A DNA stretch of 64,000 bases from Salpingoeca rosetta (taxonomy: Eukaryota; Protista; Choanoflagellata). The notes beneath the pieces were generated by a model. The model saw only the letters and a program-made list of their open reading frames with translations, did not search any database and was not told where the DNA came from. This document shows positions 7,602 to 48,420 of this stretch, in pieces. A program made the translations under genes and the position numbers. The DNA lies in the NCBI GenBank assembly GCA_033442325.1, contig JAWQFM010000012.1, forward strand, positions 1,411,793 to 1,475,792. The letters are read 5' to 3'. The stretch's first letter is position 1. Every line of letters begins with the position of its first letter.

Positions 7602-8274
7602 ATGGCCGGAGTTGCGGGAACGACGAGCACGTTCACGTGCCTGTTGCCCACAGGCATGATGGTGCAGGTCCGGTGCCCTGTCACGGACACCTTCAACGAT
7701 CTCAAGGAGGTCATCTGGAAGGAGGCCGCTCGCCTTCCCTTTTACGCAGAGCTCAAGGTGCGTCATCGCTTCAACGTTTGGTGGGGCTGGGTGTGGCTTG
7801 TTTTTTGGTAGTGCATGTATTGATGGTGCCCCTCTGCCACGAAACAACGCTCACACCTTGCTCACCACACTCATCCCACGGTTTGCAGGATCCAAACGGC
7901 TACAGTATTCAGTATGTGAACAACAGCGGCGAGCTGACTGAACTGGAGGATGAGCAGCACGTCGTCAACGTTCAAGCCTACAGCAACTTCCTCAAGGTGA
8001 GAGCGTGTGCGTATGTATGCGTTTGTGTTGATGTGTGCGTGCGTGTGTGCATGTGCGTGCGTGTGTGTGTGTATGTTTGTGTGTTGATGTGTGCGTGCGT
8101 GTGTGCATGTGCGTGCGTGTGCGTGCGTGTGCGTGCGTGTGCGTGTGCATGTGCGTGATCACGCGCAGTGTTTGTGTTTCCTTCATGTCCCTTGTCCGTT
8201 TCGTTAGCTGCGTGGAACCTGCGGCTCTGCTGAACTGCCTCGACGATCATGCGTTCATCACCCCCCTTCTCCAA

Positions 8275-39614: not shown

Positions 39615-40348
39615 TTGCCTGCGTGTGTGTGCGCGCGTGATTGATTGATCTGACGTAAGCGATGAAGTGTTTGTTTGACCTGAACCTAATTGTAACATAA
39701 TGTGTAACACATTAAATGACCCAACAAGCAACAATTATCAATGAATCAACTGAATCATGATGAGCTCGCAATACATACATCGAGGTGACGGGCATAATGA
39801 TATGACACTTGCCGTCGGCTACAATCCCACAAGATCAAATCGACACTACACATGGCAATACGTTTCTTTCGTTTGGATTGTTGATACTCACTCGAGGTTG
39901 AGTTTGACAGCAGGAGGGCGCGAACGCCACACCTGCCTGGGCAAAAATTGCCACGTTGAGACACCACATTCGTGATGTTCAGTCAGGTCAAGCTGGGCCG
40001 CGTGCAATGCCCAACTCTCGCCAACCCCGCAGCTGCTGCGTGATCCAGCATGCGAGACGTGCAGGTAAGTATGCCTCTGCTTGCCGTCCTTCCAGCATAT
40101 CAGAAAATTCATTCAGTTTGCACACTTGTGGGTTTCGGCGTGTGACTCAAAGTAAATTTAAATTATTGTTTTGAAGGACCTTTTGTTCACAGTCAGCAGT
40201 ACGCAAGAAGCAAGCAAGAAGCAACGAGCGATCACCATTCACGCCTCACTGACCGCACACTCACCCATCAACCACACATCACCTCACACCCACGTCAGTG
40301 CGCCAGCCAGACTGTTGTACTCCCCACGATCACACACACACACACACC

Positions 40349-42438
40349 ATGAGCGAGCCAAAGCGCGGTGATGAGGAAGCGCGTGAAGCGCAGCCTCCTC
40401 TCACAACAGAGGCAGGCAGGACACACACAGGCACTGGCACGTCTGGGGTGCCACGCATGCCGGGCGATTGGGTGTGCGATCAGTGCGGGGCGCTCAACAC
40501 GGAGCAGCAGTTCCCGTGCACCCAGTGCCGGTACCCCTTGTTCGAGCTGGAGGACGCGCACCGGCAAGAGGCGGGGGTGTTTGAGGGCCGCCACTCAAGC
40601 GTGTCTGTGGAGCCAAACGCACAGAACCCGCACGCCGGGTCCCGCGGTCGGCCACGCGACGCTGGGCCGCCGCAACGGGAGCCCACCACCCCAATCGAGC
40701 GAACATTCGCCCAGCTCTCCGTGGAAGAGAAGGAGGGCCTGGCTGCGCCTGTTCCCCACCTCAACTGGCAGTGCCCCGTCTGCTACGTGATCGGCGCCGA
40801 GGCACCGTGCGTCTGCTGCGGCTATGACCCAGACACCACAGAGCTGCCTGTGCTCGCAGCCGCAGAGGCGCAGGAGGAAGCAGAGGAGGAAGAGCGCTCG
40901 CTCTACGAACAACAGCTCGCAGCCGGCACCAAGATTGTCGGTAAGCCACCTGCGTCCGTGTGCGGCTATAAGTGTCATCCGGCTGTGTTTGTGCGAATGA
41001 ACAAGTTCGCGACCAGTTTGGATCGAGGCGACTTGTCCTGTGCCCGTGGGCGTGTGTTGCTTCCCACTCGAACGTGACACCCTTCCACCTACATTCACAC
41101 ACACACACACCCACACACACACCCACACACCACACACACTCATGGTGTGATTGCATGACAACAAAGAGGTAACCCACGGCGCGCAGGCAGGCCCGATTCC
41201 TCTGCGCAGCGGCGGGTTCCGGTTCCGCGTGTGGGCACCAAACGCACAGCGCGTCTTTGTCATGGGCGACTTCAACAGCTGGAAGGAACGCGACCAGGCG
41301 TGCGAGATGCGCAAGGAAACAAACCTCACGCACTGGCGCATCGACATCCCTGCTGCGCGCACAGGCCACCGCTACGCTTTTCTCGTCAAGTTCAGGCAAC
41401 CGGACAAGGAGTATATGAACATGAAGGACATGACCAGGCACCGCCCCTCGCGAAAGGATCGTTTTGTCTGGCGCGAGGACCCGCGTGCTCCGGTCAGGCA
41501 ACGAGCTGCAATGTCTCTGTATTTGTATTTGTGTGTGAGTGTGTGTATTTGTGTGAATGAGGAGTGAGTGTGTGTGTGTGTGTGAATGAGGAGTGAGTGT
41601 GTGTGTGTGTGTGAATGAGGAGTGAGTGTGTGTGTGTGTGAGTGTGCGAATGAGGAGTGAGTGTGTGTGTGTGTGTGAGTGTGTGTGTGAATGAGGAGTG
41701 AGTGAGTGAGTGAGCACGCGTGTATGTGCGTGTGTGCGTGTGCACCCTGTGATCGCCTCTGTCTGCCAGCCAGTCTGTCTATATCCGTCCGCCTGCCTCC
41801 CCATTCGTCGTTGACTCACTCACTTTCATTTCTCCTGCAACAGATGCTGGTGTCCTGCCATGAGCATCGCCGCCGCCACTTCTACAGCGTCCTTTGTGAG
41901 TTCGGGTTCACAATCTCGTGTACTGTCACTGCCATAACACACTGAACAGTGTGCCATTGTTCAGTGTTCATGTTCACATACGCACACACACACGCACGCG
42001 CGCGCGTGCACTTGACAATGTGCAGACGATCACTCTGAGTTTCCGTGGACTGACGGCGACTTCATACCGCCCCCAATCAACAAGCTCGTCCTGTATGAGG
42101 TGAGACAGCCACCACCGCAACACAATCGCCCATGCACCATGAAATCGATTTCTTCTCGCGCACACATGTGCACCCGTGCTTACCACGTGTACGTTTTGCT
42201 GTGCTGTGTTGGGTTGCGATGATGGGCTGTGACAGCTGCACGTGGCGTCGTTCTCCAAGGCGGACGGGCAAGACCACGGCACATTTGCATCCACCACTGC
42301 GCGTCTCGACTACCTGAAGAGCCTTGGCATCAACGCCATCGCCCTAATGCCCATCACCCACGACGACCACCCCAATGAACACCACAACATGCCGTGCTGG
42401 GGGTGAGTTGTTGTGTGCGTGCATGTGTGTGTGCAGTG

Positions 42439-42480
<42 letters not shown>

Positions 42481-42912
42481 CCTGCAGTGTGCGTATGCGT
42501 GTGTATGCTCTGCACACATTGCACACCACAAGCGGCAACCACACTCACGCGTGAGGGATGTCCTCTTCCCACTACTTGGGCCTGCGACGCTTGCTTCCCC
42601 CATCCGACCGCAGGTACGATCCCATCTCGCTGTTTGCGATTCACCCAAGTTACGGCACACCAAACGACCTGAAGCTGCTGGTCAACACCGCGCACGAGCT
42701 GGGCATGGTGGTCGTGTTCGATTCCGTCTTCAACCACATGCACTCACGCTCCATTCTCCAGTTCTGGGACGGCACAAACCTCTACTTTGAGCAGGGTGTG
42801 TGTGTATGAGAGAGAGAGAGATATAGAGAGAGAGAGTGTGTGTGTGTGTTCGTTTGTGTGTTCGTTTGTGTATGCGCCTGTGTCTTCGTTTGTGTCTTCG
42901 TTTGTGTATGCG

Positions 42913-42965
<53 letters not shown>

Positions 42966-43868
42966 TGGGGTACAACTCTGTGTGGTGTACAACGCGACTG
43001 GCAGCGGGCACACTGATGTCACTTGCACATCGGCCCAGACAACAGCATCCGTCAACGCTCATCATGTTGATGACCACCACACGCTTGTGCAACAGAGGGC
43101 ACGGAATGGGGCCCACGCCCCCGCTTCACATCGCATGGAGTTCAGGATTACATCATCGACTCCATTGTACAGACGATGCTCAGTACACTGTCATGACACA
43201 CACGCACACACATAAACACACATATACGCACATAGACGCACTGTTGCCGTCACATGCGCTCTCTTGTTGCCCTTCCTCCCCGCGTGCTCCACTAACATCG
43301 GTGCCCCAAATACAGGTCTCCTTCTTCCGCGATTATCACATGGACGGCGTTCGCGTCGACTCCACCTCAAATGTCCGCGGTCAGGGCAGCGACATCCCGG
43401 GTGGCTGGCAGCTACTACAGGTGCGCCTCTTTTGGTCGTTGGCTGGTTGGTGTGTTGGTTGGTGTGTCGGTTGGTGTGTTGGTTGTATGTGTTGGTTGTA
43501 TGTGTGCTTGTGCGGCCTCGCGCACACTGACTGCCCACTCATTCCCTCTCGACACCTTCCACGGTGATTTCTACACGCACGCACGCACACACGCACGCAC
43601 AACCCGTTGATCAGCGCATCAACGACGTCGTGCACGAGAATTTCCCGCGCGCGTTCACCATTGCGGAGGATTTGTACGACGACCGGCGGCTCAACACGGG
43701 CGGCGCGTGCTTCGACCTGCAGTGGTGCCAGGGCACATTCAAGGTGATTCGATTGCGCAGCCTGTGCCTTGCAACATTGGTTCTGTCACATGCAGCTCCA
43801 CTTGCTTTCCGCATCGTCATAACACGTGTCCACCAGACTGCTAACCCCACCGCACGCACACACACGCA

Positions 43869-43964
<96 letters not shown>

Positions 43965-44128
43965 CACAGGCGCTGTTTAACGTTGCTGAGCCGACGAAAG
44001 ACGCGCGACGCAACATCGGGGAGCTGGCACAGCACATCAGCCGCTCCCACCCGGGACACATGGGTGGACGTGTGCTCTACACTGAGAACCACGACACAGC
44101 GCCAGGCGACAGGGAAAAGCGGTGCGCT

Positions 44129-44213
<85 letters not shown>

Positions 44214-45300
44214 GCGTCATGAGCGTGAACAGAATTGATGTTGTTCACCAAGGTTACCTAACTCCCACTTGCATTACTTGCCCGTCATCATCCCCTCCCC
44301 CCTCGCGTCTCCTGCTGGTGTGCCAGGATTCCCCTCGCGATTGTGCACGGCGATGAAAAGAGCGTTGGATCGTTCTACGCGGTCATGCGCACCACCCTCG
44401 TTGCCAGCATCATGTTCTGCACACCAGGGGTACCCATGCTGCTCCAAGGTGAGACAACAACACGTGGTGAAAAATGCACCTTGCTGCTTCATCCTCACAC
44501 GATGTGCGTCTTCTTTAGCACCGCCATCGATGACGCTAGACGAATAACACCGTCACCACCACCATCACCACCATCACCACCATCACCACCATCGTGCTTG
44601 CAGGTCAAGAGATCTTCGAGTGCGCGTCACCGGAGTGGCCCGTCGGTCCAACTGTCGACTGGAAGCGCATCTACGAATTCCCGGGCGTCAACCTGTGAGC
44701 TTTGCACTTCCCCACTGCACCTTGATATGTGTTTGTGTGTTGCGCATGTATGCGTGCGTGCTGACCTCTCATTGGAATGCATGCACCACACTGCCCTTCC
44801 CTCCACGCACACGCAAAACCTCACACATGCTCCTGCGTCTCCCATCACCCGTGCACACACGTACGCGCACACGCAGCGTGTTCAGGGCGCTGATTGCACT
44901 GCGCCAGAACCAGCACGACAACACGCTTGGGCTAACGGGCCCATATGTGCGTGTGCATCATCTCAACGAAAGCGATGGCGTCATGGCCATTCACCGCTGG
45001 GCAAAGGTGCAATGACGCCACAACACGAAGACAACCGCATGTGTGCGCGCGTGTGTGTGGAGGGGGGTTGTGTTTGTGTGCTTGTGAGCGCGTGGTTGTA
45101 TTTGTGTGCTTGTACGTTGCTTGGGTTGTGTTCGTGTGGTTTTCCACCTTGCCATTCCTGCAACATTCCAAAGCTATGATGACCTTACATACATTTCTCG
45201 TTGATGGTGTGTGTGTGTGTGCGTATGTGTGTGTGTGTGTGTTCGTGTGTGTGTGTGTGTGTGTGCGTGTGTGTGTGTGTGTGTGTGCGTGTGTGTGTGT

Positions 45301-45363
<63 letters not shown>

Positions 45364-45581
45364 AGGGCGGGCCTGGTGATGATGTGATGGTCGTTGCCAA
45401 CTTCAGCAACAAGAAGTTTTCCAGCTACCGCGTCGGCTTCCCCCGTGAAGGTCAGCCGTTGGGTTCTCTGCGCATTTCGTGCGACACAGTGGGCCTGTTG
45501 TTGACCTGGTCGAGTGTGCACACAGCTTCCAAAACACACAACGCACACGTGCGTGTCGAATCACAGTCTCACACGAACACG

Positions 45582-45680
<99 letters not shown>

Positions 45681-46627
45681 AGGCCGGTGGAGTGTGCGAC
45701 TGAGCACATCGCAGGCGGCGTACAACGATGGGCATCACGACACGAGCATTGACGTGCCGGAGCACATCAACGTGACCACGCACCATCCACGCGACGGATA
45801 CCCGTTTTCGGGCGCCATTGCCCTTTCGCGCTACACCGCCATCTTCCTGTCGCAGAACGGCGAGGCGCGGCTGGTGTTCCGCGTCAAGCAGGAGACGGAG
45901 TGGGGCACCAGCGTCGGCATCTCGGGCTCAGACCCGGCCCTGGTGCGCAGCAATACGTGTGGTCGTCGCTGCGGTTGTGTGTCTACATTTGTGTGTGTGT
46001 GTCTGTGTGTCTGTGTGTGTCTGTGTGTGTCTGTGTGTGTACTTTTGTGCACTTGCGTGTGTCTACTTTTGTGCACTTGCGTGTGTGTACTTTTGTGCAC
46101 TTGCGTGTGTCTACTTTTGTGCACTTGCGTGTGTTTGCGTGGTGTGCATATATTTGTGTGCATGCAGCCAACGTGCTTGTGACCTCACAGCCCACAACGC
46201 ACAACCCACACGTGCACACATCAGGGGAGCTGGACGCGAGCGATTGAGCTGCGAACGGACACTGCAGATGCGCACTACCCCTGGTGGCAGAGCGATCCCG
46301 TTGTCGTGCCCGCACGCACAGAGCTCTCTTACAAGATGGGTGGGTTGCCATCGCGTGTTTGTAGTGCCATGCCGCGTTGTCGTCGTGGACGTGCCGTGTG
46401 GTGCGGCTTTTGTGAGTGTGTCCTGTGTGGGTGGTGTTGCTTGCCTTTCTACACGACTACAATGCCTTGTCACCACCCCATGTCGTGTTTCTCACAACCA
46501 AGCGTGCTGTTGCGATGGTTTGCGATCAACAGTACTGTTGCGCAACGATGAAATCGTGCACTGGGAGGACCGCGATGACCGGACAATATGTCCACCCATC
46601 GGCCGCGTTCGCCTCATCCTCTCTTGA
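40349..46627 (+). CDS. GH13 alpha-glucan-active enzyme (bacterial branching enzyme/trehalohydrolase-like) with two N-terminal RanBP2-type zinc fingers, CBM48 and C-terminal CBM20
   Basis: Zinc fingers PGDWVCDQCGALN..FPCTQC and WQCPVC..APCVCCG. CBM48: FRVWAPNAQRVFVMGDFNSW. GH13: YELHV, LDYLKSLGINAIALMP, WGYDP, YGTPNDLK, DSVFNH, DGVRVD, IAEDL, ENHD and PMLLQGQE, with the D/E/D triad intact. CBM20: VFRVKQETEWGTSVGISGSDPALGSW...YPWW...YK...VHWE. Confidence 0.9.
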
Positions 46628-47122: not shown

Positions 47123-48420
47123 TCACTGCTTACTGTCTACGGCCTGTGCTGTGCTAGTTGTCGTTGCTGTCGCTGCTGTGTGTCGCTGCAAAGTGCGGGC
47201 GATTGCGGCCGCGTACGCCTCTGAGGCACCAGGGTGAATTGGCAGGTACAGATATGGCTCTGTCAGCTCCAGCTCCGACAAGCGGATGCTGCCGTCGTCG
47301 TCCTGCATAATGTCAATCCTGGCGTACAGGCATGGCGGCTGCGTTGCCAGCACGCGGTCCACAAACGCTCGCTCCACCTCCGTTGGTGCTGCTGAGTGCT
47401 CGGGAAAATGGAGCTGGTCGCCCTCAAATGTGGCGCGCTTGTGCACTGCATGGGACAGGGCGCCGTCGAACCAAATGAGGCTGGTCTCTCCGCGCGTGCG
47501 AATGCTGTGCATGAACTTCTGTACCATTGCGTCGCGGTCTGCCAGGAGCGCGTCCAGGTGGGCTTGGGCGGCCTCGTGGTCGGCCGCGCGGAAGTGCTTC
47601 GTCTTGAATGAGCTGGCGCCCACAGCTGGCTTGATCACAACGTCAGACCATCCGCGCTGCTCAACCAGATCTGCCACTGAATGCTTGGTGCCTCTGCTGT
47701 AGTGCGCTGTTGGAATAGTGGGGATGCCCTTCTCCTCCAACTTGGTCAGATACCCTGCGTTGCTCGAACACAGACATGTGCCATGTGCGCAGTTTAGTTT
47801 TGGGTGTGCGTGTGTGTTTGTGTGTGTGGTGGGGGGGGGTGCGAATACATGAGTATGGGAGAGAGGAAGACAGAGAGCGCGCGTGCGTGCGATTACGACT
47901 GTGAAACTGTGCAGTTCCAAAGTGTCGATGGGCCAATCGTTGAAAGAAAAGCAGCGTAAATACGCAACTGTGCAAACACACACAAGCATGCACACAAAGC
48001 ATGCACACAAGCAATTCTGCGCACACGCGCTCCACTACACCTCTTTGCTTGTCCCGCCTCGTTCCTCTCCTGCTTGCCCCTTGATTCACTCACAACACTA
48101 GTAGACACACCTTTGTGAATGTTGGAGCGAAGGACAGAGAGGCTGTTGTGGATGACGAGGTTGCGGCGCTCCACCTCGTCCAAAAAGGCCACAAACTCAT
48201 CGTACTTGAGGTGGTAGTTCCATGGCGACTTGACGATGCCCACATCGCGCTGCGTCCAGTGCTCAAATACATCGGGCGTGTCCCAGGCCAGGTTCACTGC
48301 ATCAACCCCGTGCTTCTCCTTGAGCAGCTTCATCAACAGCGGCGTCTCGTTGTCGTCGCTCGTCCCGCTGGTGGCCGTGATGAACACCACCCGACCTTCT
48401 CGCGCCTCCTCACTCGTCAT
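47123..48420 (-). CDS. ATP-grasp ligase, bacterial RimK/glutathione synthetase-like (DcsG-like) family, 2 exons
   Basis: Motifs AWD, KSPWNYH, NS..VLRSNIHKGYL, VVIKPAVGAS, MVQKF..SIRTRGETSLIWFDG..SHAVHKR and YARIDI..LSELELTEPYLY. Single intron 48110-47755. Confidence 0.88.

What the first reader, a model, noticed from the sequence alone, without database searches (positions are those of the whole stretch)
40349..46627. Zinc finger (2x RanBP2-type) + CBM48 + bacterial-type GH13 + CBM20 fusion: candidate glycogen quality-control enzyme
Seen: exon 1 encodes two W-x-C-x2-C...C-x2-C fingers, spliced in frame to a catalytically complete GH13 with a carbohydrate-binding module on each side. The GH13 motifs (GTEWGPRP, RINDVV...TIAEDL...GGACFDLQW, YTENHD) look like bacterial GlgB/TreZ-like enzymes rather than eukaryotic GBE1. 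Established: RanBP2/NZF fingers bind ubiquitin or ssRNA, and animal polyglucosan control uses CBM20 proteins (laforin, STBD1) together with ubiquitin ligases (malin, HOIL-1). Inference: a horizontally acquired alpha-glucan enzyme gained eukaryotic targeting fingers, possibly linking glucan remodelling to ubiquitin or RNA. The fingers lack both the TF ubiquitin-binding dipeptide and the ZRANB2 RNA-binding residues, so the ligand is open.
Basis: partly seen in the sequence, partly recalled or inferred. Interest (0 to 1): 0.7.

Follow-up and report, generated by a model that had tools for sequence, protein, structure and literature searches.

The report
Bacterial-type glycogen enzyme with zinc fingers
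The choanoflagellate Salpingoeca rosetta makes one spliced protein (PTSG_02082) that joins two small zinc fingers to a bacterial-type glycogen/starch enzyme flanked by two sugar-binding modules; related species share the fusion, but what the fingers bind is still unknown.

Summary
Window 40349-46627 (+) is a 17-exon gene whose 915-aa product is identical to the public S. rosetta protein PTSG_02082. Spliced RNA contigs from three studies, plus raw RNA reads, join the finger exon to the CBM48 exon at 40940|41167.

The layout is finger 1, finger 2, CBM48, GH13, C-domain, CBM20.
- Finger 1 fits the RanBP2 pattern exactly. Finger 2 is a shortened C4 variant.
- The GH13 domain keeps its catalytic residues: D503, E541, D608.

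Monosiga brevicollis, Choanoeca perplexa and an unnamed fourth genome share the layout. The phase-1 intron after the finger exon is the same in all three genomes examined.

The catalytic core groups with a very large, uncharacterised bacterial CBM48-GH13-C family (31-39% identity, clade support 97/96). It passes neither the GlgB nor the TreZ curated cut-off. Its predicted fold is closest to short bacterial branching enzymes (Z 43). S. rosetta keeps a canonical GBE1 elsewhere.

A bacterial origin was probably already listed for the Monosiga ortholog (Yue et al. 2013). The finger and CBM20 additions have not been discussed in the papers I could search.

Enzyme activity and finger ligand remain untested. 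The ubiquitin / glycogen quality-control idea has no direct support. This is a moderately interesting new variant of a known kind.

The parts
40349..40940 (+). Exon 1 (aa 1-197, ends in phase 1): start codon, both zinc fingers, acidic linker. No signal peptide.
   Evidence: ORF and GTAAGC donor. RNA contigs cover 40300-40939 and join to 41166/7.
40469..40528 (+). Finger 1, W41-C60: canonical RanBP2/NZF-type C4 finger.
   Evidence: Unique pattern match in the window. W, 4 Cys, N and FPC..C.YPL are invariant in 4 taxa. Best PDB profile hits are the TAB3/TAB2 NZF fingers. pLDDT about 80, and Foldseek top hits are RanBP2 fingers.
40766..40819 (+). Finger 2, W140-C157: shortened C-x2-C-x8-C-x2-C finger followed by a conserved (Y/F)DP...E.P tail.
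   Evidence: 4 Cys, P, D, P, E and P are invariant in 4 taxa. Best PDB profile hits are the HOIL-1L NZF (E 0.03-0.06) and Nup153.
41167..41492 (+). Exon 2: CBM48 (Pfam 41205-41396). There is no in-frame ATG upstream of the module.
   Evidence: PF02922 E 2.5e-12 on the exon alone. Joints 40940|41167 and 41492|41844.
41844..41895 (+). Exon 3: 52-nt mini-exon (MLVSCHEHRRRHFYSVL).
   Evidence: Found only through the RNA joints 41492|41844 and 41895|42026.
42026..42099 (+). Exon 4: linker into the catalytic domain (FPWTDGDF...LVLYE).
   Evidence: RNA joints.
42236..42402 (+). Exon 5: start of the GH13 barrel.
   Evidence: PF00128 E 7.8e-08. Joints 42099|42236 and 42402|42614.
42614..42795 (+). Exon 6: GH13 region I (VVFDSVFNH; D440, H445).
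   Evidence: PF00128 E 2.5e-10. Residue positions.
43096..43166 (+). Exon 7: GTEWGPRP loop.
   Evidence: Contig coordinate arithmetic and the loose end at 43095.
43316..43420 (+). Exon 8: region II (GVRVDST). R501; nucleophile D503 at 43358-43360.
   Evidence: Joint 43166|43316. Invariant in a 79-sequence alignment.
43615..43743 (+). Exon 9: region III (TIAEDL). Acid/base E541 at 43666-43668.
   Evidence: Contig pieces. Invariant column.
43970..44121 (+). Exon 10: region IV (YTENHD). H607 and D608 at 44090-44095.
   Evidence: Contig pieces. Invariant columns.
44327..44448 (+). Exon 11: barrel, continued.
   Evidence: The 434-nt contig interval fits exons 10 (end) through 15 (start) exactly.
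44604..44694 (+). Exon 12: barrel, continued.
   Evidence: Joint 44694|44877.
44877..45006 (+). Exon 13: end of the barrel and start of the C-domain.
   Evidence: Joint 44694|44877. PF02806 covers aa 716-786.
45366..45450 (+). Exon 14: C-domain.
   Evidence: Contig arithmetic. PF02806.
45683..45942 (+). Exon 15: end of the C-domain and start of CBM20 (from 45871).
   Evidence: Contig pieces 45688-45941 and joint 45942|46225.
46225..46339 (+). Exon 16: middle of CBM20 (LGSW..., PWWQ).
   Evidence: Joint 45942|46225. PF00686.
46533..46627 (+). Exon 17: end of CBM20 (IVHWEDRDDR) and the TGA stop.
   Evidence: Model equals P0152. This exon lay outside the 6000 letters laid, so its junction rests on frame, the GT..AG ends and identity with the public model.

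Best explanation
Window 40349-46627 is gene PTSG_02082 of Salpingoeca rosetta. It is an expressed 17-exon gene encoding a 915-aa protein that is probably cytosolic.

Shown:
- The core (CBM48, GH13 barrel, C-domain) belongs with a huge bacterial family of about 600-aa enzymes of untested activity.
- The core keeps every GH13 catalytic residue.
- Its predicted fold is most like short bacterial branching enzymes.

Inferred history: an ancestor of S. rosetta, Monosiga and Choanoeca acquired the core from a bacterium. It then gained introns, a C-terminal CBM20, and an N-terminal exon with two C4 zinc fingers of the RanBP2/NZF kind.

Inferred mechanism:
- CBM48 and CBM20 hold the enzyme on glycogen-like alpha-glucan.
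- The GH13 domain cuts alpha-1,4 chains. It either transfers them (branching or another transglycosylation, which I think somewhat more likely) or hydrolyses them.
- The conserved fingers, on a long disordered tether, dock the enzyme to a macromolecular partner that is still unknown.
- The enzyme acts alongside the canonical GBE1, not in its place.
For: - Gene model and splicing. The model is identical to P0152. Reads indicate the RNA is on the + strand.
- Domains.
- Catalytic residues D440, H445, R501, D503, E541, H607 and D608 are present and invariant across 79 homologs.
- Orthologs with the same layout: M. brevicollis P0049 and C. perplexa P0151, and genomic contig L088.
- The phase-1 intron after K-[IV]-V is identical in three genomes.
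- Bacterial family: more than 8000 relatives, spread over about 20 phyla, at 31-36% identity over the full 620 aa.
- The choanoflagellate clade plus this family excludes TreZ with support 97/96.
- The AF2 core model has pLDDT 88.9 and pTM 0.93.
- Best structural matches are Rhodothermus branching enzymes: Z 43.3 and 41.9 over 561-563 residues. TreZ scores 36.6 and human GBE1 35.5.
- Region II lacks the hydrolase-type K/H. In the bacterial relatives region IV reads ESHDEVANGK, which resembles branching enzymes (the comparison rests on my knowledge of branching-enzyme motifs).
- Two of 12 bacterial loci sit next to glycogen-synthase-type genes.
- A canonical GBE1 lies elsewhere in the genome.
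- Fingers.
Against: - No member of the bacterial family has a measured activity that I could find.
- NCBIfam GlgB scores (183 and 179 bits) and the TreZ score (174 bits) are far below their cut-offs of 741, 577 and 539. 'Branching' is therefore only a structural lean.
- The choanoflagellate versions changed region IV to (T)ENHDT(A/V)PGDRE.
- The choanoflagellate stem is long (1.1-1.5). Its sister changes between trees.
- An AU test does not reject placing the choanoflagellates outside a monophyletic bacterial family (p 0.32). The donor is therefore unresolved, and HGT rests mainly on taxonomic distribution.
- The fingers miss the Pfam cut-off and lack known ligand-contact residues.
- Cytosolic location is inferred only from the hydrophilic N-terminus and the presence of zinc fingers.
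Confidence: 0.7

Rival explanations
1. One reading: the fingers are NZF-type ubiquitin binders that bring the glucan enzyme to ubiquitin-marked glycogen or glycogen-bound proteins. This would be a choanoflagellate analogue of the HOIL-1 / malin-laforin polyglucosan control system.
For: - The best PDB profile hits of the N-terminus are ubiquitin-binding NZFs. Finger 1 matches TAB3/TAB2 (E 0.02-0.05). Finger 2 plus its tail matches HOIL-1L NZF (E 0.03-0.06).
- Finger 2 keeps hydrophobic residues at the NZF positions 14 and 25: V/F/L/L and C/L/L/C in the four taxa (my reading).
- Laforin is reported absent from M. brevicollis (PMC2714694), so another system could fill that role.
Against: - The T-F dipeptide is absent from both fingers in all four taxa.
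- All those E-values are weak. Ran-binding and RNA-binding fingers appear in the same hit lists.
- The UBA-like stretch in the Monosiga model is below cut-off (E 0.023). It has no PDB match and is absent from the other orthologs.
Confidence: 0.13
2. The fingers bind single-stranded RNA (ZRANB2/RBM5 type) or Ran-GDP (Nup153/RanBP2 type), placing the enzyme on RNA granules or at the nuclear pore.
For: RBM10, ZRANB2, RBM5, Nup153 and RanBP2 fingers are among the top sequence and fold matches.
Against: The ZRANB2-type N-x-N-(F/W)-x-R-R residues and the Nup153 L-V dipeptide are not present (my knowledge of those motifs). No link between an alpha-glucan enzyme and either ligand is known.
Confidence: 0.1
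3. The GH13 core is an ancient eukaryotic gene inherited vertically and lost from all other sampled eukaryotes. It was not acquired from bacteria.
For: The AU test does not reject a tree with the choanoflagellate clade outside a monophyletic bacterial family (p 0.32). In one tree its position relative to TreZ is unresolved.
Against: - In a search that includes NCBI and EukProt proteins, the only eukaryotic hits were the three choanoflagellates. The next hits were bacterial, at E 1e-101.
- The family occurs in about 20 bacterial phyla.
- An independent phylogenomic screen lists a bacterial origin.
Confidence: 0.08
4. It is a digestive enzyme for the glycogen of bacterial prey, acting in the food vacuole or secreted.
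For: Choanoflagellates eat bacteria. The HGT surveys stress acquired glycoside hydrolases for nutrient uptake (PMC4046809).
Against: There is no hydrophobic signal sequence: the N-terminus is MSEPKRGDEEAREAQ.... Cysteine zinc fingers and a long acidic disordered linker are cytosolic or nuclear features.
Confidence: 0.05

Closest known systems
Unnamed bacterial CBM48-GH13-C family of about 600 aa. [quoted passage not shown]
   Same: Full-length collinear alignment at 31-39% identity. Same three domains, same catalytic residues and shared family motifs (GPRPDF, IAEDL, VHHLN...HRW..GGPGDDV). They form a clade with support 97/96.
   Different: The bacterial proteins have no zinc fingers, no CBM20 and no introns. 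Region IV differs: ESHDEVANGK in bacteria, TENHDTAPGDRE here. The activity of the family is untested.
Bacterial branching enzyme GlgB (GH13_9), especially the short Rhodothermus enzymes (PDB 8zqa, 6joy).
   Same: Closest solved fold: Z 43.3 and 41.9, 2.4-2.5 A over about 562 of 623 residues. Same CBM48-barrel-C layout. Region II lacks the K/H of hydrolases.
   Different: Only 22-24% identity. The NCBIfam GlgB equivalog scores are 183 and 179 bits against cut-offs of 741 and 577. It falls in a separate clade in every tree.
Malto-oligosyltrehalose trehalohydrolase TreZ (GH13_10).
   Same: Comparable HMM score (174 bits). The exons at the start of the barrel score best against TreZ.
   Different: Below the cut-off of 538.8. 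Excluded from the clade at 97/96. Lower structural score (Z 36.6, 487 residues aligned). The bacterial loci examined have no treY neighbour.
RanBP2-type / NZF zinc fingers (TAB2/3, HOIL-1L, Nup153, ZRANB2, RBM5/10).
   Same: Finger 1 fits the defining Cys/Trp/Asn spacing exactly. Both fingers draw almost only this family from PDB, by profile and by predicted fold.
   Different: Pfam PF00641 is not reached. Finger 2 has shorter loops and no Asn. Known ubiquitin, RNA and Ran contact residues are absent.
Animal glycogen-control proteins with CBM20 or NZF: laforin, STBD1, HOIL-1/RBCK1.
   Same: A CBM20 that should bind glycogen is combined with a protein-interaction module. STBD1's CBM20 is among the PDB hits.
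   Different: A different catalytic domain: a glycoside hydrolase/transferase, not a phosphatase or E3 ligase. There is no homology beyond the small modules. This is analogy only.

Membership tests
GH13 (alpha-amylase family) | (beta/alpha)8 barrel with conserved regions I-IV and the Asp nucleophile / Glu acid-base / Asp triad. | tested here: met
   PF00128 E 1.7e-23. D503, E541 and D608, plus D440, H445, R501 and H607, are present and invariant. AF2 model pTM 0.93, matching GH13 structures at Z 35-43.
GlgB, bacterial branching enzyme (GH13_9) | Score above the curated NCBIfam equivalog cut-off. | tested here: not met
   NF003811 183 bits (cut-off 741). NF008967 179 bits (577). TIGR01515 142 bits (464).
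GlgB, bacterial branching enzyme (GH13_9) | Branching (alpha-1,4 to alpha-1,6 transfer) activity. | not testable with these tools
   Only the closest fold (Z 43) and branching-enzyme-like regions II and IV in the bacterial relatives point this way.
TreZ (GH13_10) | Score above the TIGR02402 cut-off, and membership of the TreZ clade. | tested here: not met
   174 bits against 538.8. The TreZ clade is separate, 100/100, and excluded at 97/96.
Eukaryotic GBE1 (GH13_8) | Closest relatives are eukaryotic branching enzymes. | tested here: not met
   Human GBE1 reaches only E 6e-21 and Z 35.5. Bacterial relatives reach E 1e-101. A canonical GBE1 gene lies at G000:C1, about 2.309 Mb.
Bacterial CBM48-GH13-C family of about 600 aa | Full-length collinear similarity and a common clade. 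| tested here: met
   31-39% identity over about 620 aa. Clade support 97/96. Whether the choanoflagellates sit inside the family or beside it is unresolved (AU p 0.32).
RanBP2-type zinc finger | Pattern W-x-C-x(2,4)-C-x3-N-x6-C-x2-C (pattern quoted from memory). | tested here: met
   Finger 1 fits in all four taxa. Finger 2 does not fit: it has an x8 spacer and no Asn.
RanBP2-type zinc finger | Pfam PF00641 gathering score. | tested here: not met
   11.0 bits and 12.8 bits for the L088 ortholog, against 27. The family is not listed at E below 0.1 on the full proteins.
RanBP2-type zinc finger | Zinc-ribbon fold of two short hairpins. | tested here: inconclusive
   Both fingers have pLDDT about 80 with paired short strands. 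Foldseek's top 30 are almost all RanBP2/NZF fingers at rmsd 0.6-1.0 A over 22-24 residues, but every E-value is 1.2 or higher.
Ubiquitin-binding NZF subclass | T13-F14 and hydrophobic-25 contact residues (from my knowledge of Npl4 and TAB2 NZFs). | tested here: not met
   Finger 1 reads GA/HT/TA/GL at positions 13-14. Finger 2 reads YV/FF/CL/LL. Only the hydrophobic character of finger 2 is retained.
CBM48 | Pfam PF02922 gathering score. | tested here: met
   47.4 bits on the exon alone and 43.3 bits on the full protein, against a cut-off of 22.4.
CBM20 | Pfam PF00686 gathering score, and the site-1 tryptophans. | tested here: met
   59.9 bits against 23.3. Nearest PDB matches are the CBM20s of CGTase and glucoamylase. 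LGSW and HWE tryptophans are present (their assignment to site 1 is from memory).

The most novel reading that the evidence does not exclude
The conserved NZF-like fingers recognise ubiquitin, or another tag, on glycogen particles or glycogen-bound proteins. In that way they would direct a bacterial-derived branching-type enzyme to poorly branched glucan. That would be an independently evolved polyglucosan-repair system in the closest relatives of animals, in a lineage reported to lack laforin.
Probability: 0.1. Interest if true: 0.75.

Novelty: new variant of a known kind. Interest (0 to 1): 0.42.

Why it matters
This is a clean, RNA-verified case of a bacterial enzyme being 'eukaryotised'. 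After transfer it gained 16 introns, a second carbohydrate-binding module, and a separate exon of zinc fingers. All of these features are conserved across choanoflagellate genera.

It also points to a very large bacterial GH13 family whose activity nobody seems to have measured.

If the fingers turn out to read ubiquitin or another cellular signal, the protein would link glycogen architecture to signalling in the sister group of animals. S. rosetta is genetically tractable, so that idea can be tested directly.

Tried and rejected
- **Exon-by-exon searches.** The joined protein was assembled only inside scripts and never sent to a search tool. Full-length work used the public protein P0152, which a search returned and which proved identical.
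- **Big HMMER search with the CBM48 exon.** It did not list the window's own protein. It did give the Monosiga ortholog, which opened the rest of the analysis.
- **CBM20 family search of the genome.** It found nothing, not even this gene, because the module is split over three exons. The result is uninformative.
- **Complex prediction** of fingers 30-175 + 2 Zn + S. rosetta ubiquitin: score 0.03 against a mark of 0.34. This is no answer either way.
- **Metagenome scan** with finger patterns: no confirmed relatives.
- **Own-genome search** with the finger region: no paralogous module.
- **UBA-like N-terminus of the Monosiga model.** Pfam E 0.023, below cut-off, and no PDB hit. I did not rely on it.
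- **Gene neighbourhoods of 12 bacterial relatives.** Mostly unrelated genes. Only two loci had a glycogen-synthase-type neighbour, which is a weak functional hint.
- **Donor search.** Three trees gave three different sisters: a metagenome protein near Nostoc, an unresolved position, and Saccharimonadota. The AU test was not significant. No donor is named.
- **Papers.** Searching by locus tag gave 0 hits. The held part of the S. rosetta HGT supplement lacks this gene, but that file is truncated.
- **The search of earlier findings.** Nothing relevant.

Full report
**What is there.** The + strand between 40349 and 46627 carries a chain of short open frames separated by (CA)n/(GT)n-rich introns. 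I anchored the conserved peptides and read the junctions. This gave a model in which every intron is GT..AG and every phase fits.

- Spliced contigs came from three independent studies: X4, X6 (one 3149-nt contig) and X12 (2828 nt). Raw RNA reads came from X21.
- They show the joints 40940|41167, 41492|41844, 41895|42026, 42099|42236, 42402|42614, 43166|43316, 44694|44877 and 45942|46225.
- The contig coordinate arithmetic fits all remaining exons.
- The RNA added a 52-nt exon (41844-41895) that I had missed.
- In X21 the first mates lie on the - strand, as expected for a + strand RNA in a standard stranded library.

The finger exon is therefore part of the same mRNA as the enzyme. Exon 2 also has no in-frame ATG ahead of its CBM48. 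The last junction, 46339|46533, lay outside the stretch laid.

**Identity.** The joined protein was built only inside scripts.
- The HMMER search with the CBM48 exon returned P0049, a full-length look-alike.
- A word search with P0049 returned P0152, 'hypothetical protein PTSG_02082 [Salpingoeca rosetta]', 915 aa. It is identical to my model.
- The genome size (55.4 Mb) fits what I recall for that species.

From here on P0152 served as the reference for full-length work.

**Domains.** Pfam on P0152 gives CBM48 (aa 211-274), Alpha-amylase (from aa 352), Alpha-amylase_C (aa 716-786) and CBM20 (aa 823-903, E 2e-16).
- The GH13 residues D440, H445, R501, D503, E541, H607 and D608 are all present.
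- They are invariant in a 79-sequence alignment.
- The N-terminus is hydrophilic, with no signal sequence.

**Fingers.** Finger 1 (aa 41-60) fits W-x-C-x2-C-x3-N-x6-C-x2-C. It is the only such match in six frames of the window, and none appeared in 100 shuffles. Finger 2 (aa 140-157) is C-x2-C-x8-C-x2-C, without the Asn.

Pfam's zf-RanBP model is not reached (11-13 bits against 27). Other evidence does point to this family:
- A profile of the N-terminal region draws almost only RanBP2/NZF fingers from the PDB, 13 of 17 hits.
- Finger 1 aligns with the TAB3/TAB2 NZFs, RBM10 and ZRANB2.
- Finger 2 and its tail align with the HOIL-1L NZF and Nup153 (E 0.02-0.3).
- AlphaFold gives both fingers pLDDT of about 80 in an otherwise disordered region.
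- Foldseek's top 30 are nearly all RanBP2-type fingers, at rmsd 0.6-1.0 A over 22-24 residues, but none is statistically significant.

I therefore accept the family-level assignment for finger 1 and regard finger 2 as a shortened relative. The known contact residues for ubiquitin (T-F), RNA and Ran are absent.

**Conservation.** The same layout occurs in three further places:
- Monosiga brevicollis MONBRDRAFT_28467 (P0049)
- Choanoeca perplexa EP00045_P002355 (P0151)
- A genomic contig of an unnamed organism, L088 from run SRR29340315

In the four sequences the eight cysteines, the Trp, the Asn and the flanking FPC..C.YPL and (Y/F)DP..E.P residues are invariant. The linkers diverge freely.

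The intron after the finger exon sits at the same codon position and phase (after K-[IV]-V, phase 1) in S. rosetta, M. brevicollis and L088. The fusion therefore predates their divergence. I found no paralog of the finger module in the S. rosetta genome, and no relatives in a metagenome scan.

**Origin of the core.** Outside these choanoflagellates, the best hits are bacterial proteins of about 600 aa, without introns, laid out CBM48-GH13-C. They score E 1e-101 at 35-36% identity. TreZ follows at 1e-39.
- A profile search saturates at 8000 members.
- A scan of reference genomes finds the family in about 20 phyla, all at 31-36% identity to the S. rosetta core. These include Planctomycetota, Cyanobacteriota, Bacteroidota, Actinomycetota, Myxococcota, Chloroflexota and Saccharimonadota.
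- None of the bacterial members carries fingers or CBM20.

In a careful IQ-TREE run the choanoflagellate clade (100/100, stem 1.48) groups with this family to the exclusion of TreZ (97/96). A first quick tree agreed (97). A larger quick tree, which included two badly extracted rows, left the node open. The immediate sister differs in each tree. An AU test does not reject bacterial monophyly with the choanoflagellates outside (p 0.32).

My conclusion is a bacterial-type enzyme, most simply explained by one old transfer, with the donor unknown. Additional file 1 of Yue et al. [quoted passage not shown] This is very probably the Monosiga ortholog, but I could not map the GI number. S. rosetta also keeps a canonical eukaryotic GBE1 at another locus.

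**What the enzyme does.** No curated equivalog model is passed. GlgB scores 183 and 179 bits against cut-offs of 741 and 577, and TreZ 174 against 539. The same holds for the bacterial relatives. The nearest solved sequences are remote (E 2e-30).

Several observations lean towards a branching-type enzyme:
- The predicted core (pLDDT 88.9, pTM 0.93) superposes best on short bacterial branching enzymes: Rhodothermus at Z 43.3 and 41.9, M. tuberculosis at 41.7, E. coli at about 40.
- These stand clearly above TreZ (36.6) and human GBE1 (35.5).
- Region II lacks the Lys/His typical of hydrolases.
- The bacterial relatives read ESHDEVANGK in region IV, close to the branching-enzyme signature as I recall it.
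- Two of twelve bacterial loci lie next to glycogen-synthase-type genes. The other ten show nothing consistent.

I therefore lean towards a glucan-chain transferase (branching-like) acting on glycogen, held there by CBM48 and CBM20. Hydrolysis is not excluded.

**The quality-control idea.** The analogy with HOIL-1, malin-laforin and STBD1 is attractive, and laforin is reported absent from Monosiga. Even so, nothing tested here supports ubiquitin or RNA binding. The single complex prediction gave no answer and is recorded only under what was tried.

**Verdict.** This is a real, expressed and conserved gene. It is already in the databases as a hypothetical protein, and its bacterial ancestry has probably been listed before. 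The new points are the verified and conserved accretion of NZF-like fingers and a CBM20 onto a member of an uncharacterised bacterial GH13 family. I rate it a new variant of a known kind, of moderate interest.

Noticed in passing
L001 (G000:C1:2307743-2310964), minus strand, ORFs 1510-1812 and 864-1322: The same genome has a canonical eukaryotic-type branching enzyme (GBE1-like: ...GIVYREWAPAATAVSLTGDFCDWDR..., ...RIPAWITRAVQP...). The window's gene is therefore an extra enzyme, not the only brancher. Part of this locus is withheld (reads N).
   Followed up: partly
L087 (M. brevicollis CH991567.1:386310-397364), around 8055-8136: The annotated Monosiga ortholog ends at 8055, but the S. rosetta CBM20 end (aa 864-889) matches 8059-8136. 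The public model's C-terminus (aa 841-885) therefore looks mis-called, and a complete CBM20 is probably encoded.
   Followed up: partly
L087 3001 to about 3120 (P0049 aa 1-40): Only the Monosiga model has an extra first exon with a UBA-like stretch (SQLLEMGYPTEDVDQAIRSAG). Pfam UBA gives E 0.023, below cut-off, and there is no PDB hit. It may be real or an annotation artefact.
   Followed up: partly
window 47123-48010 (-): A convergent neighbour ORF of 295 aa has weak ATP-grasp similarity (Dala_Dala_lig_C, E 0.042). Its identity and gene model were not worked out.
   Followed up: no
window 40331-40347, 42405-42470, 45040-45360 and most other introns: Long (CA)n/(GT)n tracts fill nearly every intron and the 5' UTR. 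They attract unrelated RNA reads on both strands: depth spikes, loose ends, an 'opposite strands' joint 40331/42412, and an apparent C>T at 42418. These are repeat artefacts, not features of this transcript.
   Followed up: partly
G000:C28:467468-468901 (+): An intronless GH13 ORF (694 aa open frame, PF00128 417 bits). It may be the 'Alpha amylase' PTSG_08827 (PF00128, 666 aa, closest to a Meiothermus DUF3459 protein) that the S. rosetta HGT survey marks as foreign (PMC7971027 supplement), which would make it a second bacterial-type GH13. I did not map that tag to these coordinates.
   Followed up: no
L006 1478-2662 and L047 5419-7260: In Nostoc calcicola and Hymenobacter lucidus the bacterial homolog lies beside a glycogen/starch-synthase-type glycosyltransferase (Glyco_transf_5 / Glycogen_syn). 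This is a hint that the uncharacterised bacterial family works in alpha-glucan synthesis.
   Followed up: partly
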